From positions 62,001 to 126,000 of the IMG/VR virus record IMGVR_UViG_3300017987_000001: a stretch of 64,000 nucleotides of DNA; one strand, given 5' to 3'. The notes beneath the pieces were generated by a model that made no database searches, was not told where the DNA came from, and saw only the letters and a list, made by a program, of their open reading frames with translations. Within the stretch, counting starts at the first letter, position 1. Every line of letters begins with the position of its first letter. A program made the translations under genes and the position numbers. Shown here in pieces: positions 24,180-62,897 of the stretch.

Positions 24180-24181
24180 GA

Positions 24182-24925
24182 CTAGTCTCCTTCGGTTCCA
24201 GTCGCTCGAAGATCGATGGCGAGCGTCTTGAGCCACGGCGCGTCCGGCACGATGCGCCACGTCTCCAGATAGGCCCAACCAAGGACTACCGCTGCTACGA
24301 AGTGCTGATCGTATTCCTCAATGCGGTTCACATCGGACATCTCGGTCGTCTCAAGACGATGGAGCTTGAGATCCTTACGGATCGCCGGGCCGAACTGGAC
24401 CAGCTCCCGAAAGACCTCGTAACCGAGAACTTCGGTCTCCGCACCGGTACGCCCGATGCAGAAGATCGTGTGACTGCCCAAGACGCCGATCGTGTGATAC
24501 TCGCCACGAAGCGTCGTGAGCGACCCGTCTTCCTCTTTACCGAGGCCGGACGTCATACCGTGGTTGATCCCGAGCTTCTGCGTGCGCAGCGGATTGCGCT
24601 TGATGTAGATCGCGATCCGCTTGCCCAGTATCGCGGGATCCCACTTGTAGACGGGCGCGATGAGGATTCCTGTTTCTAGTAGTCCTTCAGATGTGTCTTC
24701 AGGCTGGAGCTTGACGATGTTGTCTTTGAGTGCTTCGTCTTCGATATAGTTAGGTGTCGAAAAATGGTTCTGAAGGATCCTAAGTATGGCTCCTGTGAGG
24801 ATGTTCGGCGTGTGGCCAGTCGAGCATAGGCTGCTGAACTCTTGTAGGTCGACAAGAGTCGGCCCAGCTAGGGGGCTGGGAGCAGGCGCGGGAGTAGTGC
24901 AGTCGCTTATGTTGGCTTCGGCCAC
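24182..24925 (-). CDS. Tail terminator/completion protein (247 aa)
   Basis: Lies between the neck genes and the sheath; alpha/beta pattern with C-terminal WAYLETW. Confidence 0.55.
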   Translation of the reverse strand: MAEANISDCTTPAPAPSPLAGPTLVDLQEFSSLCSTGHTPNILTGAILRILQNHFSTPNYIEDEALKDNIVKLQPEDTSEGLLETGILIAPVYKWDPAILGKRIAIYIKRNPLRTQKLGINHGMTSGLGKEEDGSLTTLRGEYHTIGVLGSHTIFCIGRTGAETEVLGYEVFRELVQFGPAIRKDLKLHRLETTEMSDVNRIEEYDQHFVAAVVLGWAYLETWRIVPDAPWLKTLAIDLRATGTEGD

Positions 24926-38489: not shown

Positions 38490-41400
38490 CTAAACCTTGT
38501 TCCCGCTCGTCGTAACGTTGGTGCCGTTCTGGTTGAAGTTCGCCGCCGTGTTGCCCCTGAGATGGTTCACGCCAAACAGGTTGTTGTCACAGTCGGCGTC
38601 TTCCTGAATGCCGTTGCCCGTGTTGCCGTAGCACCGGTTTCCACAGACCATTGTTTCATCAGTCTCGTCCAAGTGGATGCCGTCATCCGAGCAATCGCGA
38701 ACGTGGTTGTTATTGCACTGCGAGTAGTCAACACCATTAAGGAATATACCGTCCCCGTTCACGGTGACGATCTTGTTGTCGTTGATCGTCATGTACGAAC
38801 CCGTGCTCACGCTGATGCCGTAGTTGCCGCTCGTACCGATGCTATAAAGGAAGTTGCCATTGACGACCGTATCGGTTCCGGCCACCACAATGCCGTTCAA
38901 ACTTGTCGTATCAATGTGATTGTTCACGATCTGGCAACGAGCACCGGCAGACGCGAAGTCGATGCCAATACCGGCATCGTTGATCTGGTTCAATGCCACG
39001 AGCAGATCCGTAGCCGCAGCCGTGCACTTGATCCCGTCGTTGCCGGGATCATTGACTATGTTACCCACGATGACCGACCCAGAGCATGCCACGTTGGTCA
39101 GATCAATGCCATGCGTCGCCGGGGCATCCACGACGTTGCCGATGATCATGCACCGAACCTGCGACCTGATTGCCGGTTCAGCGTTCACACTCGTCACGTA
39201 GTTGCACGCGACCAGACCGGTTGCGCTGCGAATCTCGATGCCGAGACCGGACGAGTTGACGCTGTTGCCGACAACAACCCAGTTGCTCCCGCCGTCGCGG
39301 TCGATGATGCCGCGATTAGGAACGCTGCCCGACTGCGTTATAACGTTCCCAATGACGGTCACGTCGTTCCCGTTGTCGATGTCGATCACCTGATCACTCA
39401 CCTCGTAGAACAGATTCCCTACGATTGCGAGTCCCGTGACACCGGTGAAGTCCGAATACACGCCGTCGGCCTGACCCTGATAGCATACGTTCCCGGCAAC
39501 CACAGACCGGGACGCACCACTCAAGTCAAAGTGAGGACCAACGGGACTGATCGACATGTTGCCGACAATGACAACACCGTCGCCCTTGGCATCGATGCTG
39601 AAGCCACCGACCAAGTAGATGTAGTTCCCCACAAGCAGGATGTCGGTATCGGTGGAGTCACAATCGAATCCCGAGTTCACCACGTCATCGATGAAGTTGC
39701 CGATGGCTGCTGATTTTGGGCCATGAATCTCAAATGCGACTTGAGAATTGGTCACGTAGTTGCCGATGAAGACCGTGAAGTCACCATCGCTCGTCCAGCC
39801 ATTCGATGCCGACGTATTGCACATGTTGCCGATGACCAGAGTATGTTCCGCAGCCGAGCTGATGTACCCGAACCTCGTCCCCGAGTTGAGGAGGATGTTT
39901 CCGAGAACGAGCACATTGTCGGCGGTCACCTCGACACAGTTCGACCCCGGAGCGACAGCCGTGGTGTTCCGAACATGGTTGCCGATGATCGTCGTGTTGT
40001 TCGATGCGGTACGAATACCATGACCATCGATTGTGTTCAGGTAGTTCCCGAGGACCGCACAGTCTGTGGCCGCCGCTATATCGATGCCGTTGGCACCACC
40101 GTTGTTGATGTAGTTCCCGATGATGAGACACGCGGCTGCATTGATATCGATTGAGATACCGGTCGCCCCGGTGATCGTGTTGCCAAGGATGGTATGCTCA
40201 CCCGAGCCGCTGACCAAAACACCCACGTCAGGGTTCTGGATGCTGTTGCCCACAACGACGCAGTACTGCGAATCCACGATCTCAATTCCATCGCCGGTCG
40301 GATTCATGATCGTGTTGCAGGAGATAACGGTGCGGTCGCCGTTGTTCTGGTAGATGCCGTCGCCGTTGTTTGAGTAGATGAGGTTGCCGACGATGACGCC
40401 GTTGTCCACCGCAGAGTCGATGCCGATGCCGCCGTCATCGTTCGACATGTTCCCGATGGCGATACTGCGGTCGCCGTTGATGTCGTACCCGTATCCAGAA
40501 CCCCTGACCGAGTAGTTGCCGATCAGGGAAGACTCCGAACCATCGACCTTGAAGCCTCCGGTATCGCAAGAGAATGCGAAGTTGCCGACCAAGAGATGCT
40601 CGACGCCCCTGTCGAGGTTGATACCAATGTCGGCATCGTACACGTTATTGCCGATGTAGACGTGACGGTCTGCGGCGTTCGCGTTCTTGATGCCGTCGAA
40701 ACCCGCTGCCGGATCATACACGTAGTTGCCGATGAGCATGATCTCGCGAGAGATGCTGATCAACAGGCCGATGTCGGCGGGAGTATTGATGTAGTTGCCG
40801 ACGACCAGTGACTCCTGTACGTCGAGCAGATGCATCCCGTAGCTACCGGGATTATCAACGACGTTCATGCCGATGATACAACCGTGGTTGTCGGTGGTGC
40901 CGTCGTCGCCGCCTTCGATGCCGATGCCAGTAATACCGCTGATACGGTTACAGAGGAACATGTTCTGCGGACCGTTGAAGTCAATACCTTTGGCGGTTGC
41001 ACTGTTGCCATTGATCACGTTCGCAACGACCAGACAGTCCTGCGCGCCCGTCGCCATCTCAATGCCGTCGCCGGTGGTCGTTCCGACGTTATAGATAAAG
41101 TTTGCAACAACTATGTTCTCGTCGGCGTTTGCGCTAAGGTCGATACCGTTGCCCGTCGTGTCGCGCACATAGTTTCCAACGAACACGTTCCTGACGTTGT
41201 TGCTATCGAGGCCCGTCGAGCCGCCCTCGACCCAGTTGCCGACGACGAGGTTGTCATCATTGATGCACTGAATCGCCGCGCTCGTTGAATCGATCAAGAC
41301 GTTGCCGACCGCTATAGCGTCGGTCTGAAGGTAGATGCCGTTGCCGCCAGCAGAGTACACGAGGTTTCCGACCGCCGTGCACCGAAGATTCTGAAGGATG

Positions 41401-42524
41401 ATGCCCTGCGAACCGGGGTTGTAGATGATGTTTCCAACGAACAGACCGTCGCCGCCAATCCCGGCGATACCATCAGTCGTGGCGTCAGCAATCATATTGC
41501 CAACGCACATGTTGTCGCTAGATGCGCCAGCGATATTGATACCGTCGTCTCCGGCGTTGTAAATTACATTACCGACCATGATGTTTCGACCGTTACCGGG
41601 GAGTGAGATGCCGTGACTTGATGTACTCGCGATATGGTTGCCGGTGATGTTGCAGCGAGTCGCGCCATTCGCAAACAGCACACCGACGGTACAATTATCG
41701 ATATGGTTGCCAACGACCACAACGTCGTCTGAGTCATCGAGCGTGACTCCCGCCGCAGTCTGATCGCGGATCGTGTTCCCGACGATAACGGTCTGGGAAC
41801 ATGCCTCGACAGTGATCGCGCCGCTCGCGCCCTGCGACGACATCTCGTTCGCGCAGATGATTCCCTCGTCCGCGCGCTTGACATAGATACCGCCAGCCGA
41901 ATCCTCCAGCTGGTTGCCCATGACAGTACACTGCCAGATGCTCTGCGACTCGACCGCGAGGTGGATGAGATACCCCGCCGCATCGGAGTCCTTCCTGATC
42001 TTGTTGTTGAGGACGCGAATGCGATTCGCATAGCCGCCTGCACCCGTCACGTCCATCTTCACGAAGTTCGCGCCGTCGAAACTGCGGTCGCATTCGCAGT
42101 TGCTCACAGTGAGGTCGAGGCGACCGCCGGTCGAGGGGAAGTCGAGGAACGGCTCCGCTTCGGTAGCGAGTGCGCGGTCGATATAGATCGCGTCGATCCA
42201 TACACCGTTCGACGGCGTCGCCGCCGTGTCCTGCACGAAGGGCTGGTCGACCGTACTTGTCACCTTCACGTCACGGATCACGAAACGATGCGATGCGTTC
42301 AAGATGATCGCCGGACCGCCAGAGTACGTGACGTTGATTTCACAGGTGCGCCCGGCGCCCATGATCGTGATGTCGGTCTTGCTGGAGAGATCGATCTGCG
42401 CGTCAGCGACGTGCTGGCCTTCTTCGAGCAGCACGAACGTACCGCTGTCGATATTGTTCAGAATGTCCGGCAGGTCATCGGCCCGCAGGACAAAGAGGAA
42501 CTTGTTCTCGTAGCCACTCGGCAC
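38490..42524 (-). CDS. Very long right-handed parallel beta-helix (pectin-lyase-like) spike protein (1344 aa)
   Basis: GTG start 42524 after GGGG RBS; dozens of ~22-aa (V/I)xGNxI.....GI repeats. Confidence 0.85.
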   Translation of the reverse strand: MPSGYENKFLFVLRADDLPDILNNIDSGTFVLLEEGQHVADAQIDLSSKTDITIMGAGRTCEINVTYSGGPAIILNASHRFVIRDVKVTSTVDQPFVQDTAATPSNGVWIDAIYIDRALATEAEPFLDFPSTGGRLDLTVSNCECDRSFDGANFVKMDVTGAGGYANRIRVLNNKIRKDSDAAGYLIHLAVESQSIWQCTVMGNQLEDSAGGIYVKRADEGIICANEMSSQGASGAITVEACSQTVIVGNTIRDQTAAGVTLDDSDDVVVVGNHIDNCTVGVLFANGATRCNITGNHIASTSSHGISLPGNGRNIMVGNVIYNAGDDGINIAGASSDNMCVGNMIADATTDGIAGIGGDGLFVGNIIYNPGSQGIILQNLRCTAVGNLVYSAGGNGIYLQTDAIAVGNVLIDSTSAAIQCINDDNLVVGNWVEGGSTGLDSNNVRNVFVGNYVRDTTGNGIDLSANADENIVVANFIYNVGTTTGDGIEMATGAQDCLVVANVINGNSATAKGIDFNGPQNMFLCNRISGITGIGIEGGDDGTTDNHGCIIGMNVVDNPGSYGMHLLDVQESLVVGNYINTPADIGLLISISREIMLIGNYVYDPAAGFDGIKNANAADRHVYIGNNVYDADIGINLDRGVEHLLVGNFAFSCDTGGFKVDGSESSLIGNYSVRGSGYGYDINGDRSIAIGNMSNDDGGIGIDSAVDNGVIVGNLIYSNNGDGIYQNNGDRTVISCNTIMNPTGDGIEIVDSQYCVVVGNSIQNPDVGVLVSGSGEHTILGNTITGATGISIDINAAACLIIGNYINNGGANGIDIAAATDCAVLGNYLNTIDGHGIRTASNNTTIIGNHVRNTTAVAPGSNCVEVTADNVLVLGNILLNSGTRFGYISSAAEHTLVIGNMCNTSASNGWTSDGDFTVFIGNYVTNSQVAFEIHGPKSAAIGNFIDDVVNSGFDCDSTDTDILLVGNYIYLVGGFSIDAKGDGVVIVGNMSISPVGPHFDLSGASRSVVAGNVCYQGQADGVYSDFTGVTGLAIVGNLFYEVSDQVIDIDNGNDVTVIGNVITQSGSVPNRGIIDRDGGSNWVVVGNSVNSSGLGIEIRSATGLVACNYVTSVNAEPAIRSQVRCMIIGNVVDAPATHGIDLTNVACSGSVIVGNIVNDPGNDGIKCTAAATDLLVALNQINDAGIGIDFASAGARCQIVNNHIDTTSLNGIVVAGTDTVVNGNFLYSIGTSGNYGISVSTGSYMTINDNKIVTVNGDGIFLNGVDYSQCNNNHVRDCSDDGIHLDETDETMVCGNRCYGNTGNGIQEDADCDNNLFGVNHLRGNTAANFNQNGTNVTTSGNKV

Positions 42525-42537
42525 GGTTATCCCCCTA

Positions 42538-45534
<2,997 letters not shown>

Positions 45535-55249: not shown

Positions 55250-56100
55250 TGCTTGCTCTCCTTGCTGACCTCGACGGCTTCAGGCTTCACTTCTTCCTTC
55301 GGGCTGATAGCAAAAATGTTGGACGCATCCGGGAGCATCCTGCGATGCTCCACTGGTTCGATCCTGTCCGTCGTCTTGCGCACGGTGAGTGATACGGCTT
55401 CGAGCAGCGCCGAGATCGAGGCTTCAGCCTGATCCGCGCCGCGCAGGTTGTCGGACTCGGACTCCAGCCGCAGCAGGTCGAGACCCTTACCCATCAGGTC
55501 GACGCTGTTGAAGTTGTTCGGCTGAACCGCGAATGCCGCACTGCGCGCAACCTTGATCACCTGCTCGCGGAACGTGCGCACGATGAAGTCCATCGCCACG
55601 GGCGACACATCGCCGATCTCCCAAACGCTGCGGACTATGTCCCAGCCGCCCTCGTACGCAATCAACTTCCACATGAAGTCCGGATCGCTTGCACGCGCGC
55701 CAGCCGTGAATGCCGGGAGCAGCACGTTCGCCGTGATGCATCCCTTGTGTTCGAGCGCGTCGCGCACGTCGAAGAAGAGCTTCTCGTAGGTATTGAGCAC
55801 CTTGACCTCGGCGTTGAGGTACTCGGCCATGTCTTCGACCGACTGGTTCGCCATGACACCGGCCTCGAAGATCCAGCGCGAGCCAGCCACGTCTTCGAAC
55901 AAGCACTTCGCCTGATGCAGGTCCGGGTACTCGCCCGCCAACATCTCCTCGACACGCGGATCATCACGCCGATAGCGACGAAGGTAGCGCCACGCCCGCG
56001 TGACGAACGTGTCGTCACGCGACCGACGGGGTGGGAGCTTCTTCTCGATCAGCTCCTTCGCCCGCAGCCATCGCCATCGTGGTGATTGGTTGAGTTTCAT
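55246..56100 (-). CDS. Hypothetical protein (284 aa)
   Basis: ATGA-coupled on both sides; globular helical sequence. Confidence 0.75.
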   Translation of the reverse strand: MKLNQSPRWRWLRAKELIEKKLPPRRSRDDTFVTRAWRYLRRYRRDDPRVEEMLAGEYPDLHQAKCLFEDVAGSRWIFEAGVMANQSVEDMAEYLNAEVKVLNTYEKLFFDVRDALEHKGCITANVLLPAFTAGARASDPDFMWKLIAYEGGWDIVRSVWEIGDVSPVAMDFIVRTFREQVIKVARSAAFAVQPNNFNSVDLMGKGLDLLRLESESDNLRGADQAEASISALLEAVSLTVRKTTDRIEPVEHRRMLPDASNIFAISPKEEVKPEAVEVSKESKQ

Positions 56101-56297
56101 ACCTTCATAGCCGGACGCGTGATGAGGTCCGTCCTTTCGAAGTTCCGGCGACGGTGATTGCTGCGCATGCCGTCACGGCGCGGGATGAGCGCCGACGGCT
56201 CCTTGCTGAGCGGCTCCGCCGCACAGCCCAGTGCCGCTCGCTTGAGCAGCCCGAGCTGATATCCTATATCATAAGCTACGTTAGTCTCCACCGCCAC
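56097..56297 (-). CDS. Small protein consisting mostly of the targeting-like motif AYDIGYQLGLLKRA (66 aa)
   Basis: Fills the gap, coupled to neighbours, shares a motif with the 57880 and 59841 genes. Confidence 0.65.
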   Translation of the reverse strand: MAVETNVAYDIGYQLGLLKRAALGCAAEPLSKEPSALIPRRDGMRSNHRRRNFERTDLITRPAMKV

Positions 56298-57609
56298 CCC
56301 CCAGCAGCCGCTGAATCAGTGCGATCGCCAGAAGCGTGCCGAGCGTGAGACCGCCGCCTCCCACGAGCTTGCTGATCGTCGGATCGTCCGACCACTTACC
56401 GAGGGTCGACCGTGCACCTTCCCAGCCCATGCCACCGAGCAGGTCGCCCAGCCCGGACATGCCGGTGCTGCCGACATCGCCAAGGAAGCCGCCAAACTGC
56501 CCAAGATCGCCGAAGCCGGACCCACCTGCAGCGCGGGCGTTCATGATCTGCGCGACCTCGGGGCTGGCCATGGTCGTAGGCGCTGCGCCGCCCTCAAGCA
56601 GCTTGGAGAGTCCGTAGCCGCCTCCAAGAACGCCAGCGGCAGCGCCGCCGCCGTACTTCGCCTTCTGCCACGGCGTAAGCCCGCCCCACCACTGGGCAGC
56701 CCCTCCGGGCGCAGCTGCGGCCTGAAGCACGGCCTCAGGGACCGGCGCTCCAGCGATGGTTTGCAGCGTAGGGTCTGCTGTCCCCACGCGGGTAGCGGGA
56801 CCGCTAGGTCGCGCCTGCCGTCTGGTCACTTTGGGCGATTGAAACTTCCGCCTCGGCTTTGGCGTTGGCTTCGGCTTCGCTTTCCCGCCAAAGATGCGCG
56901 ACCAGCCCTCGCGAAACTTCTTGGTGCTACCCACCATCGCGCGTCCAGCAGCTTCCTTGGCCGTCTCGTTCTCGCTCGTCTTCGGCTCGGGCTTCTTCTC
57001 CGGAGCCTTCTTCGGCTTCTCGTCCGACGCGGATTCGAGCTTCTCGACACCCGGCTTCGTCGGCTTCTGTGTTTCCTTCGACTTCGTGTCGCGCGTCACG
57101 TCGTGGATGCCACCGATCTTGTTCAGCACGTTGCGCACGCTCGCCGTCGTCACCTTCGGAGGCGTCGCGGGAGCTGCCTTCGCGGGCGTCATCTTCGGCA
57201 TCGCCGCGAGGCCGCCCGGCGGACCCTTCGGAGTGGCCGTCGGCTTGGGTGCAGGCGGCTTCGGTACTGCCGGAGTCTTCGGAGCTGCCGCAGGAGCGGG
57301 CTGTGCGGGTTGCGCCGGAGGCACAGCGCCTGCGCTCATCTTCTCAAGTGCCTCATTGATAGCCGAGGCCGAGACGTTCAGCCGTCGTGGGGCGTTCGTG
57401 CTCAGGTTCAGCTGAGGGACCATGCCCTTGGTCGGGCCGCGTGCAGGAGGAGCGTTCTCAATAACGCGAGGGCGCCCGGGGCCGCGTACCGTACCGGCAA
57501 TCGCGGGCACCGACGTGTTCTTGGTCGCCGGAACGGTCGTCTTCGTAGCCTCATCCGCCTTCTTGGTGAAGGCATTGACGAGTACGCGACGTGCCTTAAT
57601 CAGATCCAT
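56281..57609 (-). CDS. Pro/Lys-rich disordered protein with C-terminal Gly-zippers (442 aa)
   Basis: GAGGAGG RBS; AFTKKA, LEKMSA, KEAA; two hydrophobic Gly-rich helices. Confidence 0.7.
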   Translation of the reverse strand: MDLIKARRVLVNAFTKKADEATKTTVPATKNTSVPAIAGTVRGPGRPRVIENAPPARGPTKGMVPQLNLSTNAPRRLNVSASAINEALEKMSAGAVPPAQPAQPAPAAAPKTPAVPKPPAPKPTATPKGPPGGLAAMPKMTPAKAAPATPPKVTTASVRNVLNKIGGIHDVTRDTKSKETQKPTKPGVEKLESASDEKPKKAPEKKPEPKTSENETAKEAAGRAMVGSTKKFREGWSRIFGGKAKPKPTPKPRRKFQSPKVTRRQARPSGPATRVGTADPTLQTIAGAPVPEAVLQAAAAPGGAAQWWGGLTPWQKAKYGGGAAAGVLGGGYGLSKLLEGGAAPTTMASPEVAQIMNARAAGGSGFGDLGQFGGFLGDVGSTGMSGLGDLLGGMGWEGARSTLGKWSDDPTISKLVGGGGLTLGTLLAIALIQRLLGGGGGD

Positions 57610-57880
57610 CGTTTTCCTCCTCAGCGACAGCGGAGACCTTCGCGATCAGATCCATGAGAGGAACCTGATACTCCGGGTCATCCTCCAGCAGTTTACGCTC
57701 GTTCCGAACGTGATCGGCCAGCTCGGAGTAATCACGAAGCAGCTCATCTGCCGCTTCCGCCATGTGCCCCATGCACAGCCAGAAATGCTCCGGGTACCCC
57801 TGCTTCGACTCGTGCAGAAGGATCTCCGCCTGTGCGAGATGCTTCCGTGCGCAGTTCAGGCAACTCGGGCGCATAGTCAC
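57596..57880 (-). CDS. Small Cys/His helical protein (94 aa)
   Basis: CLNCARKH...H..C.GH..EA.DE, possibly a metal site. Confidence 0.7.
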   Translation of the reverse strand: MTMRPSCLNCARKHLAQAEILLHESKQGYPEHFWLCMGHMAEAADELLRDYSELADHVRNERKLLEDDPEYQVPLMDLIAKVSAVAEEENDGSD

Positions 57881-59358
57881 TAGAACCCTACCGTGGTCTC
57901 TGAACCCTTGTGCGCCTCAAGCAGCTCCTTCGTCAGATCTTCCGGCGATGCCTTCTCTACAGGCCCGCGCGTTGACTTCTCGCCCTTCTGCGCCGGGAAA
58001 TGCATCCCCTGCTGCTGCTCCAGTCGCTGATTGAGCTGCTTGATCAGCGCCTTCTGCTCCTCTGGCGTCATCGCGTTGATTTCGTCCATCGATGGCATTC
58101 CCGCCGATTCCGAGATGGACGTTTCTGCCTCCGCCTTTGGCGGCTTCTTCGGACCGGCAGGCTCATCGTGCTGCTTTGCCGCGCCCGGAGGTGCAACTGT
58201 CGCAGCCTCTGCAGCCTCGGCACGACCAGCGACCGACTCTTCTGCCGCTGGCGCTTCTTCCGGTGCCGCCTTCGGTGCTTCTTCCGCAGGAGCCTCACCA
58301 GCGCCCTCGCCCCTGCCCTTGAGGTAATCATAGAGACCATAGCCGCCCGCGCCAACACCAGCACCGGTCAGGATGCTGAGCAGGAAGTTGCGCTTCCGCT
58401 TTGCCGCCTGCTCGGGCGTCTCATCCTCACCGCCACCGAGCATGCCGGGAAGCCCGGCAAGAAGTCCAAGGCCGCCACCGAGTCCACCGCCGACCAGATA
58501 CGGTCGGATCTTCTGCAGCAGCCCGCTCCAGTCGAGCGCGCGCTTCACCATGCCGAGCTTCGCGCCGACATCGAACGCGGTCTTGGGGTCCATGTTGTGG
58601 CTCGCATTCTTCATGAGTTCACGAACGAGAATCGGGAGGCCGCCCATGGTGCCTGCGCCGAGCGCACCGCCACTCAACGCTGCGATAAGTGGCACGCCGT
58701 ACGACTGGAAGTTCGTCGGCGCGAGATCTTGGTAGAGCGCCTCTTGCCGCGCGGGGTCATCGGGATGCGAGAGCGCTGCCTGCCGTCGCGCGCGTGCCTT
58801 GTTCTCAGGAACACTGAGCGCGGTAAGGCCGCCCAGTCCACCCGCACCGAGAAGCGCACCAATGATCGTGCGGCTCGTATCATCCTCCAGCAGCTTACCG
58901 ATATCGAGAGCTTTCTTTTGCATAGGTACTCCAGCTGACTGAGACTTCCCAAACAACTCCGGCAGCTTCTCCATATGGAGGCGAAGATCCGTCTTGTCCC
59001 CGAAATCGGGAAGCTCTGGGACATTCGGAAGCGGGTACATCGGTCCCGTTCCCATCGACTCTCGGAAGCGCTTCACCCAGCTGAGATCCTTGAGCGGCTG
59101 CACTGCCTTGTCAAAGCCGCCACCGGCCAGATACCCACCGCCGATACCAAGCCCCGCCCCAGCAAGGATACCAGCAAGGTCACCGGCAGACATCTGATCA
59201 CCATGGAACTTCGCCATCTGCTCGGCGGCTTCCGGATTATCCCGGAGAATCTCCTTGATGCGTTCTCGATTCTGCTTGCGACGACGATGCACGAGATACG
59301 TCATCAGCCCAGCGCCGCCAACGCCGCCGAGAAGTGCTCCCAGATTCTCAGACTTCAT
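57880..59358 (-). CDS. Polyprotein-like protein with three Gly-zipper hairpin modules separated by KxA sites (492 aa)
   Basis: Three pairs of GxxxG helices; QKKA, MKNA and AFDVGAKLGMVKRA fall at module boundaries. Confidence 0.75.
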   Translation of the reverse strand: MKSENLGALLGGVGGAGLMTYLVHRRRKQNRERIKEILRDNPEAAEQMAKFHGDQMSAGDLAGILAGAGLGIGGGYLAGGGFDKAVQPLKDLSWVKRFRESMGTGPMYPLPNVPELPDFGDKTDLRLHMEKLPELFGKSQSAGVPMQKKALDIGKLLEDDTSRTIIGALLGAGGLGGLTALSVPENKARARRQAALSHPDDPARQEALYQDLAPTNFQSYGVPLIAALSGGALGAGTMGGLPILVRELMKNASHNMDPKTAFDVGAKLGMVKRALDWSGLLQKIRPYLVGGGLGGGLGLLAGLPGMLGGGEDETPEQAAKRKRNFLLSILTGAGVGAGGYGLYDYLKGRGEGAGEAPAEEAPKAAPEEAPAAEESVAGRAEAAEAATVAPPGAAKQHDEPAGPKKPPKAEAETSISESAGMPSMDEINAMTPEEQKALIKQLNQRLEQQQGMHFPAQKGEKSTRGPVEKASPEDLTKELLEAHKGSETTVGF

Positions 59359-59365
59359 GCGTATC

Positions 59366-59382
59366 TCCAGACAGGCAGGCAG
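59366..59382. repeat. 17-bp inverted repeat, left arm TCCAGACAGGCAGGCAG
   Basis: Exact reverse complement of 59824-59840. Confidence 0.9.
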
Positions 59383-59388
59383 TGCCTG

Positions 59389-59802
59389 TTATATCTTCTC
59401 GACCGTCTTACCGGCGTCGTTCATCACATACGCCGGAGACACAAAGGCTACAAGCTGCTCAGCGCCGTTCGCTTTGTGCAACACCGCAACATGAATCGGC
59501 TTGCGGAGCGCTCCGTGCGACTCGAAGATCTCACCCGCGTACAACGGGTCCACAAGCAGATCGTGCTTGTTATCCGGTCCTCCGATGTCCACCCCAAGCA
59601 GGATTGGTACACGCTTGGCTTTCGGCGGAGCGTTCGGATCATTCGACTGCGGTTCGTCCTGCTCCCATTCGTACAAGGCAAGCTGTGTGTTCGGGTCGCC
59701 GATCTCGCCAAAAACCCCGAGCCACATCTTGCCCAACTCGACCTTGTCCGACTCGTACATCACCCAACGGCTCGTGTTGTAGTCTACCGTCTTCAGAATC
59801 AT
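59389..59802 (-). CDS. Hypothetical beta-rich protein bracketed by inverted repeats (137 aa)
   Basis: ORF ending AYVMNDAGKTVEKI; no KxA targeting helix or Gly-zipper, unlike its neighbours. Confidence 0.7.
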   Translation of the reverse strand: MILKTVDYNTSRWVMYESDKVELGKMWLGVFGEIGDPNTQLALYEWEQDEPQSNDPNAPPKAKRVPILLGVDIGGPDNKHDLLVDPLYAGEIFESHGALRKPIHVAVLHKANGAEQLVAFVSPAYVMNDAGKTVEKI

Positions 59803-59823
59803 GACTGCCTGCCTTCTATCTGT

Positions 59824-59840
59824 CTGCCTGCCTGTCTGGA
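59824..59840. repeat. 17-bp inverted repeat, right arm CTGCCTGCCTGTCTGGA
   Basis: Exact reverse complement of 59366-59382. Confidence 0.9.
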
Positions 59841-60545
59841 CTACTTGAGCGCTATCGGGTCTAGCGCGGTACGAACGTTCGTTGCAATGTTCTCAATACC
59901 CTTTCCGACACCATAACCGAGCAGTCGGCCGCCACCGTAACCAAGCGCGCCGTAACCAAGCCCCTTCAGCGGCACACCGATGAGATCCTTCCAGACTGGT
60001 CGGCGCACCTTAGAGTACAGCGCTTTGGCTCGCGCCTTGTCGCCGCCGCTCGCAATAAAGGCCATACGCCGATCAGCTTTCCGTCGGCTAAGTGCGTGCA
60101 TCAGCGCGGCAAGAAGTCCGTAGGTTCCGGCCACTCCACCATACAACTTGCCGGTACTCTGCGACATGCGAGTACTAAGCCGCTCAGGAACAGGACGCAG
60201 TTCGGGTTCGGGCTTGGGCGCGGCTGGTGCGGCTGGTGCGGGCGTACCAGCCTCAGCGGACTGGGAGAACATCGCTTTTAGCGCATCCAAGTATCCGCCA
60301 TCCGGAGCGAGCTTGTCTTTGTAGATTGCAGGAGTGAGTGCAGTGCCGCCGAGACCGCCTACCGCACCGCCGATCATTGCGTTGCGTAGGATCTTCGAGA
60401 GCTTGTCCTTCTTCGAGAATAGGCCAGTCAGCGCGCCAAGCCCGGCACCCCCGAGCGTCGTCATCAACGGGATGCTCGATGGGTTGATCTCCGCGCGCTT
60501 CGTGAGTCCAACCATGTAGCCGAGCGCGATCGCTTGATTCGACAT
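59841..60545 (-). CDS. Two-module Gly-zipper protein with N-terminal AIALGYMVGLTKRA (234 aa)
   Basis: ATG 60545 with AAGGAG; four Gly-rich hydrophobic helices. Confidence 0.75.
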   Translation of the reverse strand: MSNQAIALGYMVGLTKRAEINPSSIPLMTTLGGAGLGALTGLFSKKDKLSKILRNAMIGGAVGGLGGTALTPAIYKDKLAPDGGYLDALKAMFSQSAEAGTPAPAAPAAPKPEPELRPVPERLSTRMSQSTGKLYGGVAGTYGLLAALMHALSRRKADRRMAFIASGGDKARAKALYSKVRRPVWKDLIGVPLKGLGYGALGYGGGRLLGYGVGKGIENIATNVRTALDPIALK

Positions 60546-60554
60546 TGCCACTCC

Positions 60555-62897
60555 TTAGAGGATCTGCTCCAGCTCTGCCTCAGCCGTCGCGTCGCTGACG
60601 TCCGGCTCGATGGTCTTCTGCTTCAGGAACAGCGTCAGGTCGCCGAGGTTCTCGAACACGTTGTTGAGGTTGTCCTCAAGCTCCGGCATGTCCTGCGAAC
60701 CGTAGCGATCCTTGAACTTATCGAAGTGCCAGTAGTACATGAACTTGATCCGACCAATGCGATCGAGGCCGAGCATCAGATCGCTGAGGTACTGATCGAC
60801 GACAGTGTTCGGATCCATCGACTTCACAAGCCCGGAGATCACGCTCGTGTCGAGCACTTCCTTCTGCCCCTGCGCAGCGGCCTGCTGCGCTTGGAACGTC
60901 GCGTCCATGTCCATCGTCGTCGCGCCGTAGCGATCGAGTGGGGTCTCGTTCGCCGAGACAAGCTCGTCCTGCGGATACATGACGCGCGGGTTCGTGAAGA
61001 GCGTCGGGTCGGTCGACGTCATCGGCTCCTGCAGCGCAGGTGCGAAAGGCTGCGCGTGCTTGACGAAGAACTTCGGTGAGCCGCTGCGGCGAGCCTGCTT
61101 CAGGATGCCATCGGCGTCGGCTTCGCGCATGCGATAGTCGATAACGAGCTTCTTGAGCGCGGCAATCTTGCTCATCGGACGTCCGATGTTGCCATTATCG
61201 CGCACCCACCACTCGATGCCGTCGGTGACGGCCTGAATCTCGCGGACGTTCGCACTCTTGAAGATGCTCAGCTCGATCTCGGCGATCGACTGTGGTGTGG
61301 CCATATCGTCCAGTTCGGCCTTGCGCCGCTTCTCTTCTCTGCGCGCCCAGTCGCTATCGGGGCGATCGAGCTTCCACGGCTCGATCATATCCTTCGACAG
61401 CTTGATGACCTTGAAGCCGTTCGGCACGAAGTAGTCGCTGCCGATCTGCGTGATGTTGTTGCCGGGCTTGTTCGTGATGACCATGCACTTATCGTAGCGT
61501 CCGCCGCCCTCAACGATGTTGTCGTAGCGACTGTACTTCGCATCCGACACATTGAAGGTCTGCCCACGATACGGCGGATAGAGCAGCTTCTTCATCTTCT
61601 CGTCGGCGTTGCGTGCGCGCGGCCAGTTGTCGAACTCGCCGTAGAGCGTGGTCCGGCCGTCTGCAACAACGCGGCGCTCGACGAAGAACGGTACGGAGCC
61701 ATCACCCTTCTCGTTGACGAAGATGACCTTCTGCCGCTCGGACACAGAGCTGGGAGCGGGAAGACCGTCGAAGACCTTCTTCCATTCGTCGAACTTGTGA
61801 CCCTCATTATCGACGAAGACGTTCTCCTTGTTCGTCGTCATCATGCGCCCGGACTTCGGGTCGACCACGGTCACGTTCCCGCGATCGTAGTCATACATGC
61901 ACTCGGCACCCTTGGGGTCGAGCATGACGAGCCGCTGCTGATACGAGCCATCAGCCATGAGCACGCGACAGTACGAACTGCAGTGAGGGTTCTGCAGCGT
62001 CTGCGAGATGCGCGTCGAGTAGACCGTCGAGGTCTCGTCATCTCCACGATTGTCGCGCACGACATAGCGATCACGCTGGAGGCGCTCCTTCTCGTCCTCG
62101 CTCAGCATCGTGTCATCGAGATCGAGCACGTTCGCACGATCGGCGATCATGATCTGGACGTCGGGAGCCGTGTCCTCGATCATCTTGTCGCCGTCAGCCG
62201 CCTTCTTCTCCATGGGTTCGGCGACAAAGGCTTCCTTCGCTGCTTCGAGGATAGCATCCATGTCGTAGATGCTGAGCAGACTGTCGGTGAATGCCGCGTT
62301 CTTGCGCATCGTAGCGAGCAGCACACGTGCAGCGCTCCAGCCAGCATCCTTGATGAAGCTTGGGAGATCCCACTTGTCGCGCAGCGCCGCGCGCTTCTCG
62401 CCGCCCGGGGGGCTCATGATGACGTGCAGGAAGGGCTTGAAGTCGTCGGCTATCGTGGAGGACAGGTAGTCCGTCAAGCCACGCAGCGACTGATCGCTCG
62501 CATACTTCGACCCGGTGTACGGGGGCCGAGCCATCGCGTTGAAGTCGGGCTGCTGGATACCCATCTCGCCCGGCGTCATCTCCTCGGTCTCGCCGAGAAT
62601 ATGCGGACGACGGTTGAGGAGGTAGTTGATCCAGTTCTCCTGCAGCGGAACGAAGGCGTCCTGACTCTTCAGGTAGAGCAGGTCGTCGCCCTTCAGCTGA
62701 CCGTTGAGGAAGAAGACGGGGGCGTACATCCACTCGTCCCCGACGCTGAAGCCCCACACACCGACGGCGTGCGTGTTGTCTTCGCTCTTATCGAGGAGCT
62801 GGAAACCTACCAGATGGTCCAGCAGGCCGGGCGCGCGGTCACGAAGGCGAGCGTGCGCGAGGTCAGCGAATGTTCGTTCGAATTCTGCATCTGGCAT
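60555..62897 (-). CDS. Large multidomain head-associated protein (780 aa)
   Basis: Long ORF with RBS; KxA sites (SKYA, EKRA, EKKA, FKSA, VKHA) at apparent domain boundaries. Confidence 0.7.
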   Translation of the reverse strand: MPDAEFERTFADLAHARLRDRAPGLLDHLVGFQLLDKSEDNTHAVGVWGFSVGDEWMYAPVFFLNGQLKGDDLLYLKSQDAFVPLQENWINYLLNRRPHILGETEEMTPGEMGIQQPDFNAMARPPYTGSKYASDQSLRGLTDYLSSTIADDFKPFLHVIMSPPGGEKRAALRDKWDLPSFIKDAGWSAARVLLATMRKNAAFTDSLLSIYDMDAILEAAKEAFVAEPMEKKAADGDKMIEDTAPDVQIMIADRANVLDLDDTMLSEDEKERLQRDRYVVRDNRGDDETSTVYSTRISQTLQNPHCSSYCRVLMADGSYQQRLVMLDPKGAECMYDYDRGNVTVVDPKSGRMMTTNKENVFVDNEGHKFDEWKKVFDGLPAPSSVSERQKVIFVNEKGDGSVPFFVERRVVADGRTTLYGEFDNWPRARNADEKMKKLLYPPYRGQTFNVSDAKYSRYDNIVEGGGRYDKCMVITNKPGNNITQIGSDYFVPNGFKVIKLSKDMIEPWKLDRPDSDWARREEKRRKAELDDMATPQSIAEIELSIFKSANVREIQAVTDGIEWWVRDNGNIGRPMSKIAALKKLVIDYRMREADADGILKQARRSGSPKFFVKHAQPFAPALQEPMTSTDPTLFTNPRVMYPQDELVSANETPLDRYGATTMDMDATFQAQQAAAQGQKEVLDTSVISGLVKSMDPNTVVDQYLSDLMLGLDRIGRIKFMYYWHFDKFKDRYGSQDMPELEDNLNNVFENLGDLTLFLKQKTIEPDVSDATAEAELEQIL

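What the first reader, a model, noticed from the sequence alone, without database searches (positions are those of the whole stretch)
59366..59840. Single gene enclosed by perfect 17-bp inverted repeats linking the upstream stop codon to the downstream RBS
Seen: one arm starts at the base after the stop of the 234-aa gene. The other arm ends inside the GGAG RBS of the 492-aa gene. A partial third copy (AGGCAGGCAG) lies just before the ATG of the enclosed 137-aa gene, which lacks the motifs of its neighbours. No transposase or recombinase is nearby. Inference: a long-range mRNA stem loops out the inserted gene and preserves translational coupling of its neighbours, with the third copy as a competing pairing. 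Alternatives are an invertible segment, a non-autonomous mobile cassette, or an RNase III processing stem.
Basis: partly seen in the sequence, partly recalled or inferred. Interest (0 to 1): 0.6.

Follow-up and report, generated by a model that had tools for sequence, protein, structure and literature searches.

The report
Invariant complementary boxes bracket a phage gene
The 17-base inverted repeat is real: it forms the two ends of a roughly 470-base gene cassette that related giant phages carry with letter-for-letter identical ends although the enclosed protein has diverged to 21-62% identity, which suggests an undescribed, probably RNA-level, control or mobility module.

Summary
Arms 59824-59840 and 59366-59382 are 17/17 complementary. 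They are unique in the complete 207,857-bp phage genome and form its longest inverted repeat with arms less than 3 kb apart.

The main result is comparative. Ten further metagenomic loci carry a homologue of the 137-aa gene. Wherever the flanks are on the contig, the same 15-17-nt arms are present. Those proteins are only 21-62% identical to the window's.

The immediate neighbours differ between loci. Some close relatives have no cassette. So the conserved unit is the cassette, not the neighbourhood.

No compensatory change occurs in the arms, because the arm sequence itself is frozen.

As naked RNA, the long-range helix (-36 kcal/mol) has a predicted probability of 0.99-1.0 in 9 of 10 loci. 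The 3' box can also pair with the cassette gene's own ribosome-binding leader, or with a 7-nt box directly after the stop codon.

The complete genome has no Resolvase, Phage_integrase, rve, Y1 transposase or RNase III match. The protein is acidic, all-beta and matches no family or fold.

Best reading (about 0.45): a portable fold-back mRNA switch that also supplies the Shine-Dalgarno (SD, ribosome-binding) sequence of the next gene. Rivals are an ultra-small transposon bounded by terminal inverted repeats (TIRs), an RNase III site, recombination linkers and an invertible segment. The reads test was unavailable.

The parts
59841..60551 (-). Upstream neighbour: 234/236-aa Gly-zipper protein gene. 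Its TAG stop abuts arm 1. It is not part of the conserved unit.
   Evidence: ORF list; weak Pfam Gly-zipper_YMGG match below cut-off; no homologue at this position in L001, L025, L027 or others; a 48%-identical homologue in L033 is followed by no cassette.
59824..59840 (-). 5' box (arm 1), 17 nt. Its inner 16 nt (CCAGACAGGCAGGCAG) are the same in relatives.
   Evidence: Identical 16 nt in L001/2, L003/4, L020, L021/L028, L023, L025, L027 and L035; 15 nt in L032.
59803..59823 (-). Purine-rich leader with a 4-nt (NNAG) period. It holds the second partial copy of the box (59804-59814) and the cassette gene's ribosome-binding region. Its length and sequence vary between loci.
   Evidence: The leader (-20..+3) pairs with the 3' box at a mean of -21.4 kcal/mol over 10 loci, against -9.7 +/- 3.5 for 51 other leaders in the window.
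59389..59802 (-). Cassette gene: 137-aa acidic (pI 5.0) all-beta protein of unknown function. It evolves fast (21-62% identity among homologues).
   Evidence: No Pfam or PHROG match; homologues found; alignment A2; AF2 model pLDDT 85; no fold match; pI; single copy in the genome.
59411..59436 (-). Hairpin H1 inside the 3' end of the coding sequence: 7-bp stem (59436-59430 with 59417-59411) and 12-nt loop.
   Evidence: Three compensatory double changes at paired third-codon positions (L003, L028, L023). The three most distant members do not keep the stem, and the shuffle tests are not significant. Suggestive only.
59371..59389 (-). Local hairpin H2: a 7-nt box that starts at the last base of the TAA stop (59389-59383) pairs with the 3' half of arm 2 (59377-59371); the loop is 59382-59378.
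   Evidence: RNAalifold consensus; 10 of 10 sequences pair, with one G-U change in L025; -9.9 kcal/mol; also picked up as a hairpin.
59366..59382 (-). 3' box (arm 2), 17 nt. Together with the preceding 9 nt and the following G it forms a 27-nt block that is invariant in relatives.
   Evidence: Exact matches of 25-29 nt between the window and L001, L023, L027, L028, L032 and L035.
59365..59368 (-). GGAG Shine-Dalgarno sequence of the next gene, half inside arm 2.
   Evidence: In 8 of 11 loci this GGAG lies at SD distance from the next start codon. In L034 the gene that follows the cassette in L001/L003 abuts another gene, and homology starts at its ATG, so the GGAG belongs to the cassette.
57880..59358 (-). 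Downstream neighbour: 492-aa Gly-rich protein gene. It is not part of the conserved unit.
   Evidence: No homologue follows the cassette in L001. Residues from 256 on align with the start of the L033 homologue.

Best explanation
The inverted repeat marks the two ends of a self-contained gene cassette of about 470 bp. The cassette sits in a variable region of the late/structural operon of a family of roughly 200-kb phages that encode their own multi-subunit RNA polymerase.

In order, the cassette consists of:
- an invariant 16-17-nt 5' box;
- a variable purine-rich leader;
- a fast-evolving gene for a 123-152-aa protein;
- an invariant 27-nt 3' block, made of the stop codon, a 7-nt box, the 3' box and GGAG.

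I propose that it acts on the polycistronic mRNA as a fold-back switch. The 3' box has three possible partners:
- the distant 5' box (16-17 bp, -36 kcal/mol), which closes the gene into a loop of about 440 nt;
- the gene's own ribosome-binding leader (-15 to -30 kcal/mol in 9 of 10 loci, -9.7 in L035), which would block its translation;
- the 7-nt box directly after the stop codon (-10 kcal/mol), which leaves the next gene's GGAG free.

Ribosomes ending the upstream gene usually stop 0-5 nt from the 5' box. Ribosomes ending the cassette gene stop on the 7-nt box. Both would shift the balance between these pairings.

Because the cassette carries its own leader and supplies the SD sequence for whatever gene follows, it can sit at any junction between cistrons without polar effects.

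Shown here: the anatomy, the exact conservation, the varying neighbours, the predicted energies, and the complementarity between leader and 3' box. Inferred: that the element acts as RNA, the direction of regulation, and whether the helix is also cut by host RNase III.
For: 1. The arms are exact in relatives. Five lineages were found without using the arm sequence: L001/2, L003/4, L020 and L021 through the protein, and L035 through the 780-aa neighbour. In L021 the contig ends before arm 2. Six more loci came from a 20-mer scan.

2. Conservation stops at the arms. The flanks are the two longest exact matches between the genome and L001, and the 2nd and 3rd longest against L035. The other top matches listed lie inside conserved coding genes.

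3. The enclosed protein is 21-62% identical to the window's. The last 136 aa of the neighbouring 780-aa protein are 70-96% identical across the same loci.

4. The long-range helix appears in the MFE and centroid folds of three loci. Its pairing probability is 0.99-1.0 in 9 of 10 loci.

5. The cassette leaders pair with the 3' box far better than 51 control leaders do, although the leader sequences differ.

6. Hairpin H2 is kept in all loci; its only change (L025) leaves a G-U pair. In L028 the GGAG-to-GGTG change creates three more pairs with the bases before arm 1. Hairpin H1 has three compensatory third-position changes.

7. The GGAG belongs to the cassette and not to the downstream gene.

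8. The complete genome has no recombinase or transposase of four major families. The protein is acidic and matches no nuclease or transposase fold.
Against: - No covariation was seen in the arms. Not even a G-U change occurs across 10 loci, whereas a helix-only constraint should tolerate some. This points to sequence-specific recognition by an unknown protein or RNA, or to the constraint of several alternative partners. It fits a DNA-level site equally well.
- Translation of the 137-aa gene would keep a 440-nt loop open, so the fold predictions for naked RNA overstate the helix.
- The arms do not abut the upstream stop or the downstream SD in every locus.
- The six loci found by the 20-mer scan are biased towards an exact 3' box.
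- The support for H1 is not statistically significant.
Confidence: 0.45

Rival explanations
1. An ultra-small transposable element bounded by terminal inverted repeats (TIRs). The boxes would be the TIRs and the 137-aa protein a new, very small transposase. This would be analogous to the 439-bp MPME elements of mycobacteriophages.
For: The geometry matches: 437-528 bp, perfect 16-17-bp terminal repeats and one small ORF. The cassette is patchily distributed: it is absent from L034 and from the homologous junction in L033 although their backbones are close. The immediate neighbours differ in every lineage, and the DUF1643 gene lies on either side of the cassette. A sequence-specific binding protein would explain the invariant ends. 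MPMEs are described in PMC3029335.
Against: The cassette is single copy in the complete genome. It always lies in the same inter-gene region of the phage backbone and in the same orientation. There are no consistent target-site duplications. The ORF is highly diverged, whereas active elements have near-identical copies. The protein is acidic (pI 4.6-6.3), has only 6 invariant residues and matches no transposase family or fold. It has no tblastn match in 50,697 phage records, which should include the MPME-carrying mycobacteriophages. The conserved right-end block is not mirrored at the left end.
Confidence: 0.15
2. An RNase III processing stem. The 16-19-bp duplex is cut by the host enzyme, which releases the cassette mRNA and gives the downstream cistron a short leader with a free SD sequence, as in rRNA precursor stems and phage T7 intercistronic sites.
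For: The duplex is perfect and GC-rich and sits exactly at cistron boundaries. The SD sequence lies at the 3' edge of the duplex. The phage has no RNase III of its own, so the enzyme would be the host's. The host appears to be a bacterium that uses SD sequences.
Against: At 16-17 bp the duplex is shorter than the roughly two helical turns usual for class 1 RNase III substrates (general knowledge). Outward extensions of the helix are not conserved. RNase III has little sequence specificity, so it does not explain the invariance. No RNA ends could be examined.
Confidence: 0.15
3. Recombination linkers. The boxes are kept as short homology patches at which co-infecting phages exchange alleles of a hypervariable gene, as proposed for the PeSL motifs of T4-like phages. 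The fact that they are inverted copies of each other would be incidental.
For: The cassette lies in a hyperplastic region with gene-level insertions and deletions. Cassette type does not follow the backbone: L027 and L035 are 92% identical in the neighbouring protein's C-terminus, yet their cassette proteins align over only 51 residues at 25%. The window and L025 show 79% against 39% over 36 residues. PeSL literature: PMC2839356 and PMC4122927.
Against: This does not explain why the two boxes are complementary, nor why the leader and the post-stop box are also complementary to the 3' box. Sixteen to 29 nt is short for homologous exchange. Identity ends sharply at the boxes in every pair, with no mosaic tracts of varying length. 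PeSLs are multi-copy direct repeats, whereas these boxes occur once each.
Confidence: 0.12
4. An invertible DNA segment (inverton). A recombinase flips the gene between the two repeats and so switches it on and off.
For: The repeat length and spacing are typical of invertons. Because the repeats are perfect, inversion would leave both junctions, including the stop and the SD sequence, unchanged.
Against: The complete 207,857-bp genome has no Resolvase or Phage_integrase match. All 11 independent assemblies have the gene in the same orientation as its neighbours. The open antisense frame is not unusual, since 32% of random windows have one.
Confidence: 0.03
5. A pair of double-stranded DNA operator sites for an unknown, conserved phage or host protein, for example one that loops the DNA or blocks transcription around the gene.
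For: Letter-for-letter invariance with no G-U-type changes is what a protein-binding site would show.
Against: No DNA-binding protein is linked to the cassette. The boxes occur nowhere else in the genome. This does not explain the extra complementary segments in the leader and after the stop codon.
Confidence: 0.07

Closest known systems
hok/sok-type fold-back mRNA (tac/fbi long-distance 5'-3' pairing with alternative ucb/dcb boxes; PMC9841398)
   Same: A 5' element pairs with a 3' element across a whole small gene. Further short boxes give alternative pairings that hide or free an SD sequence. The design relies on several mutually exclusive helices.
   Different: The gene here encodes a 137-aa acidic soluble protein, not a roughly 50-aa membrane toxin. 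No antisense RNA is evident. The element sits inside a polycistronic phage operon. There is no sequence or Rfam similarity. hok pairings are supported by covariation, whereas here the sequence is frozen.
Fold-back inhibition in IS10/IS50-type insertion sequences (general knowledge: read-through transcripts pair the terminal repeat with the transposase start region)
   Same: The transcript of an inverted-repeat end is complementary to the ribosome-binding region of the enclosed gene, which insulates it from outside transcription or translation.
   Different: No recognisable transposase, a single copy and no target duplications.
MPME1/MPME2 ultra-small mobile elements of mycobacteriophages (PMC3029335)
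   Same: A phage-borne unit of about 440-470 bp with terminal inverted repeats and one small ORF of unknown fold, present or absent among close relatives.
   Different: MPME copies are identical or nearly so and sit at different sites. Here the ORF is 21-62% identical to the window's, only the ends are conserved, and the position in the backbone is constant. There is no sequence similarity.
PeSL promoter/terminator cassettes of T4-like phages (PMC2839356, PMC4122927)
   Same: Short conserved non-coding motifs bracket variable ORFs in a hyperplastic region and mark the break-points of gene-level insertions and deletions.
   Different: PeSLs are multi-copy direct repeats with promoter and terminator features. 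These boxes are a single inverted pair that always encloses the same gene family.
RNase III processing stems that enclose a whole RNA (rRNA precursors) or separate cistrons (phage T7)
   Same: Complementary sequences on both sides of a functional unit form a duplex at its base.
   Different: The duplex is shorter and perfectly conserved in sequence. Cleavage has not been tested.

Membership tests
MPME (mycobacteriophage mobile elements) | An element of about 440 bp with terminal inverted repeats and one small ORF | tested here: met
   473 bp between the outer ends of the 16-nt arms, a 17-bp repeat and a 137-aa ORF.
MPME (mycobacteriophage mobile elements) | Sequence homology to MPME1/2 | tested here: not met
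   tblastn of the 137-aa protein and blastn of the region against 50,697 phage records gave no match.
MPME (mycobacteriophage mobile elements) | Near-identical copies at different sites in closely related genomes | tested here: not met
   Single copy; same backbone interval in all loci; the ORF is diverged.
IS / TIR transposon | Terminal inverted repeats | tested here: met
   Perfect inverted repeats of 16-17 bp in 10 of 11 loci and 15 bp in L032.
IS / TIR transposon | A recognisable transposase | tested here: not met
   No Pfam or PHROG hit; no rve or Y1_Tnp match anywhere in the genome; no fold match, best Z 3.9; acidic pI.
IS / TIR transposon | Target-site duplications and multiple copies | tested here: not met
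   No consistent direct repeats next to the arms in 10 loci; only L027 has a 6/7 match. One copy per genome.
Invertible segment (inverton) | An inverted repeat pair flanking a few hundred bp | tested here: met
   17 bp with a 441-nt spacer.
Invertible segment (inverton) | A cognate serine or tyrosine invertase | tested here: not met
   PF00239 and PF00589 are absent from the complete genome, while the positive controls matched. A host enzyme cannot be excluded.
Invertible segment (inverton) | Both orientations present in the population | tested here: inconclusive
   All 11 assemblies show one orientation. The read-level test was unavailable.
hok-type fold-back mRNA | A conserved long-distance 5'-3' pairing with alternative helices that hide an SD sequence | tested here: met
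   In silico only: pairing probability 0.99-1.0; alternative helices of -22 and -10 kcal/mol; leader complementarity exceeds the controls.
hok-type fold-back mRNA | Pairings supported by covariation | tested here: inconclusive
   The arms are invariant, so no test is possible. There are only edge effects (U-A, A-U or A/A at pair 17) and one G-U change in H2.
hok-type fold-back mRNA | A small hydrophobic toxin plus an antisense RNA | tested here: not met
   The protein is 137 aa, acidic and predicted all-beta. There is no Rfam hit and no promoter-like site on the + (antisense) strand of 57500-61000 in a sigma-70-type scan.
RNase III processing site | A double-stranded RNA of about two helical turns | tested here: inconclusive
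   16-17 bp, or 19 bp in L028; the extensions are not conserved.
RNase III processing site | Cleavage in vivo | not testable with these tools
PeSL cassettes | A multi-copy direct-repeat promoter/terminator motif | tested here: not met
   Each box occurs once, in inverted orientation. There is no promoter-like site at the boxes in a sigma-70-type scan, which does not cover other promoter types.
Any Rfam family | A match to a curated covariance model | tested here: not met
   cmscan of 58800-60400 on both strands at E<=1 gave 0 matches.

The most novel reading that the evidence does not exclude
A new class of portable, self-insulating expression cassette in giant phages. Ultraconserved complementary 5' and 3' boxes fold the mRNA of a hypervariable accessory gene into a panhandle with built-in alternative pairings. 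This lets the gene plug into any junction of a translationally coupled operon, sets its own translation according to ribosome traffic on the neighbours, and hands an SD sequence to the next gene. The frozen sequence would then reflect either the several mutually exclusive partners or an unknown sequence-specific factor that reads the boxes.
Probability: 0.3. Interest if true: 0.75.

Novelty: new variant of a known kind. Interest (0 to 1): 0.62.

Why it matters
Non-coding sequence that stays identical while the enclosed protein falls to 21-62% identity, and while the flanking genes are replaced, is rare in phages. It marks a strongly selected element that no database describes.

If it is an RNA switch, it would show how giant phages add accessory genes to tightly coupled late operons without disturbing them. 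It would also provide a compact natural part for insulating genes in synthetic operons.

If it is instead a DNA-level element, it would be one of the smallest autonomous mobile units known, with a new kind of enzyme.

Either way, the hypervariable protein between frozen ends looks like a gene in an arms race and deserves a functional test.

Tried and rejected
- **Chance.** Rejected, because the arms are exactly conserved in loci found independently of the arm sequence.
- **Repeated genomic motif or promoter.** Rejected: each box occurs once in 208 kb.
- **A general habit of this phage to bracket genes with complementary flanks.** Rejected: mean flank-flank duplex energy was -21.0 against -21.1 kcal/mol for mismatched pairs. 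My crude gene call missed the cassette gene itself in that test.
- **Known RNA family or intron.** No Rfam match.
- **Host repeat or CRISPR-repeat mimic.** A 20-mer scan of 185,579 prokaryote genomes gave only 4 lone hits, none with arm 1. Viral-contig scans gave 14 lone chance hits.
- **Relatives in IMG/VR or the phage records.** None found with the 137-, 492- or 780-aa proteins or with the DNA.
- **Protein function.** Pfam, PHROGs, ESM Atlas, Foldseek (PDB and BFVD) and VIA-align all gave nothing significant. Weak small-beta-barrel (Sm/Hfq, KOW) resemblances at Z<=3.9 are not evidence.
- **Conserved antisense ORF.** The antisense strand is open across the cassette in 6 of 10 loci, but 32% of random windows are too.
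- **Clean empty site.** L033 lacks the cassette after the 234-aa homologue. It also lacks the first 255 codons of the 492-aa gene, so this is not a precise excision.
- **More distant cassettes with covarying arms.** Relatives at 40-48% backbone identity (L041, L042) have no cassette and no variable region.
- **Set aside.** Loci L026/L031 were chance hits and look eukaryotic (a CA microsatellite). I cannot tell their origin and did not search them further. L024 and L037-L040 are also chance hits.

Full report
**Observation**

The window is bases 62001-126000 of a single 207,857-bp virus contig with direct terminal repeats. CheckV rates the contig as complete. All genes around the finding lie on the - strand and are tightly packed. 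A tail-sheath gene and large beta-helix proteins show that this is the structural/late part of a tailed phage.

On the coding strand the order of features is:
- the 780-aa gene (60555-62897);
- the 234/236-aa Gly-zipper gene (59841-60551);
- arm 1 (59840->59824);
- a 21-nt purine-rich leader;
- the 137-aa gene (59802->59389);
- arm 2 (59382->59366);
- 7 nt, then the 492-aa gene (59358->57880).

The arms are 17/17 complementary. Arm 1 starts at the base after the TAG stop. Arm 2 ends in the GGA of a GGAG that lies 6 nt before the ATG. An 11-nt partial copy lies directly before the ATG of the enclosed gene.

Each arm occurs once in the genome even with 2 mismatches allowed. The pair is the longest perfect inverted repeat with a gap under 3 kb. 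Two of 30 Markov shuffles reached 17 nt, so by itself the repeat is only borderline significant.

**Relatives**

The 137-aa protein has no Pfam or PHROG family and no relative in the phage or IMG/VR collections. The word search and the exhaustive search found a small family at 36-63% identity.

Contigs for four of these homologues could be read: L001/L002, L003/L004, L020 and L021. In each, the gene is flanked by the same boxes, CCAGACAGGCAGGCAG upstream and its exact complement downstream. In L021 the contig ends just before the 3' box. The coding DNA between the boxes is only about 70% identical.

A scan of metagenome contigs for a 20-mer of the 3' box added L022, L023, L025, L027, L028 and L032. 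Every one with enough sequence carries arm 1 (15 nt in L032) and a family member, some only 21-27% identical to the window protein.

The 780-aa neighbour led to L035, from a 210,759-bp genome whose 780-aa homologue is 54% identical. L035 also has perfect arms, around a 152-aa family member.

An exact-match control shows how unusual this is. Between the genome and L001 the two flanks are the longest shared strings (27 and 25 nt). Against L035 they rank second and third (29 and 25 nt). The other top matches listed lie inside conserved coding genes.

**What is conserved and what is not**

The immediate neighbours differ in almost every lineage:

| Locus | Upstream neighbour | Downstream neighbour |
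|---|---|---|
| window | 234 aa | 492 aa |
| L025 | 120 aa | 211 aa |
| L027 | 70 aa | 153 aa |
| L001 | 213 aa | 206 aa |
| L003 | DUF1643 gene | 206 aa |
| L028, L035 | 780-aa gene itself | DUF1643 gene |

The cassette nevertheless always lies in the same interval of the phage backbone, between the 780-aa gene and the homologue of the 278-284-aa gene.

More distant relatives lack that interval. In L042 the 759-aa homologue is followed directly by the 279-aa homologue of the window's 284-aa gene, and in L041 one gene lies between them. Window 56100-60551 is therefore an expansion region.

Within the clade the cassette is patchy. L034 (65% backbone identity) covers the whole interval and has neither the arms nor the gene. 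L033 (85%) has a homologue of the 234-aa gene followed directly by the next gene.

In L034 the 206-aa gene, which follows the cassette in L001 and L003, abuts the stop of the 771-aa gene. Its homology to L001 begins at the ATG. The GGAG after arm 2 therefore belongs to the cassette and serves whatever gene comes next. It is at SD distance from the next start in 8 of 11 loci.

- Arm 1 is 0-5 nt from the upstream stop in 7 of 10 loci. It is 25-33 nt away in L035 and L028/L021, and it lies inside the upstream frame in L032.
- In L022, L027 and L028 the next gene has its own SD sequence further on.

**RNA-level evidence**

Folding about 520 nt of the sense strand places the long-range helix in both the MFE and the centroid structure in three loci. 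Its mean pair probability is 0.99-1.0 in 9 of 10 loci and 0.54 in L032. The duplex is worth -35.9 kcal/mol.

The 3' box has two further partners:
- The 7 nt that start at the last base of the stop codon pair with its 3' half (hairpin H2, -9.9 kcal/mol). H2 is kept in all 10 sequences, with a single change that leaves a G-U pair.
- The cassette gene's own leader (-20..+3) pairs with it at a mean of -21.4 kcal/mol across 10 loci, although the leader sequences differ. Fifty-one other leaders of the window give -9.7 +/- 3.5 kcal/mol.

A hairpin inside the end of the coding sequence (H1, 59411-59436) shows three compensatory changes at paired third-codon positions. The most distant members do not keep it, and the shuffle controls are not significant.

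At the outer edge of the long helix, pair 17 is U-A in the window and L020 and A-U in L028, where two more pairs follow. Elsewhere it is an A/A mismatch.

None of this is proof. The arms never vary, so covariation cannot be tested. The complete absence of even G-U changes suggests that the sequence itself is read by something, or that it is locked by having several partners.

**DNA-level alternatives**

The complete genome has no Resolvase, Phage_integrase, rve, Y1 transposase or RNase III domain, while the positive controls matched. The family is single copy.

The protein is acidic (pI 4.6-6.3, like the rest of the proteome). It gives a confident all-beta model (pLDDT 85) and has no significant structural neighbour.

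All assemblies have the gene in the same orientation. There are no consistent target duplications. The boxes are absent from 185,579 prokaryote genomes apart from 4 chance hits and match no Rfam family. Reads could not be examined.

**Interpretation**

The best-supported reading is a portable cassette whose frozen, mutually complementary boxes act on the mRNA as a fold-back switch. The logic resembles the tac/fbi/ucb/dcb boxes of hok mRNAs (PMC9841398) and the fold-back inhibition of insertion sequences. The 3' end of the cassette also supplies the SD sequence of the next cistron.

Cleavage of the helix by RNase III is a plausible extra step or alternative. An ultra-small TIR transposon comparable to MPMEs (PMC3029335) and PeSL-like recombination linkers (PMC4122927) remain possible. 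An invertible segment is unlikely.

The cassette protein diverges far faster than the backbone, or has been exchanged between lineages. L027 and L035 are 92% identical in the neighbouring protein's C-terminus, while their cassette proteins align over only 51 residues at 25%. This gives the pattern of a hypervariable gene between frozen ends.

**Verdict**

The element is real, conserved and undescribed. Its mechanism is inferred, not shown.

Noticed in passing
window 56100-60551 (- strand): This interval, between the 780-aa gene and the 284-aa gene, is an expansion (hyperplastic) region. Relatives at 40-48% backbone identity have zero or one gene here. Closer relatives have different sets of small genes: DUF1643, Gly-zipper proteins, and 206-, 213- and 120-aa genes.
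   Followed up: partly
window 57880-59358 (-): From Met256 onward the 492-aa protein aligns with the very start of its L033 homologue. The first 255 residues are therefore an extra Gly-rich module or a fusion. Its first 30 residues weakly resemble residues 130-162 of the 234-aa neighbour.
   Followed up: partly
window 59411-59436 (-): A hairpin lies inside the conserved C-terminal coding motif of the cassette gene, with compensatory silent changes in three relatives. Part of the amino-acid conservation there may reflect RNA structure.
   Followed up: partly
window 59334-59804 (+): The antisense strand is open across the entire cassette (156-aa ORF), and fully open in 6 of 10 homologous cassettes. 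The background rate is 32% of random windows, so this is probably codon-usage noise.
   Followed up: yes
L034:2713-5739, L035:4974-6812, L041:4947-7913, L042:1-7831: Just upstream of the 780-aa gene, relatives encode RNA polymerase beta/beta'-like proteins, some interrupted by LAGLIDADG or intein domains. The family therefore resembles phiKZ-like phages with their own multi-subunit polymerase.
   Followed up: no
window 38490-42626 and 42538-45534 (-): There is a 1378-aa protein with seven right-handed beta-helix/NosD repeats (tail-spike or depolymerase-like) and a 998-aa protein with an extensin-like proline-rich stretch. A sheath-like 971-aa protein lies at 21363-24278.
   Followed up: no
L001:626-1141, L003:3-437, L028:593-1111, L032:1688-2203, L035:10961-11482: A DUF1643 gene lies upstream of the cassette in some lineages and immediately downstream in others. 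One of the two units has therefore changed place.
   Followed up: partly
L026, L031 (metagenome contigs): These chance hits to the 20-mer look eukaryotic (a long CA microsatellite and AT-rich stretches). Their origin is unknown; they were set aside and not searched further.
   Followed up: no
window 59803-59823 and homologous leaders: The leader between arm 1 and the ATG is a tract with a 4-nt (NNAG) period. Its length varies from about 20 to 40 nt between loci, as a slipping microsatellite would, and L028 carries an expanded GGCA run.
   Followed up: partly
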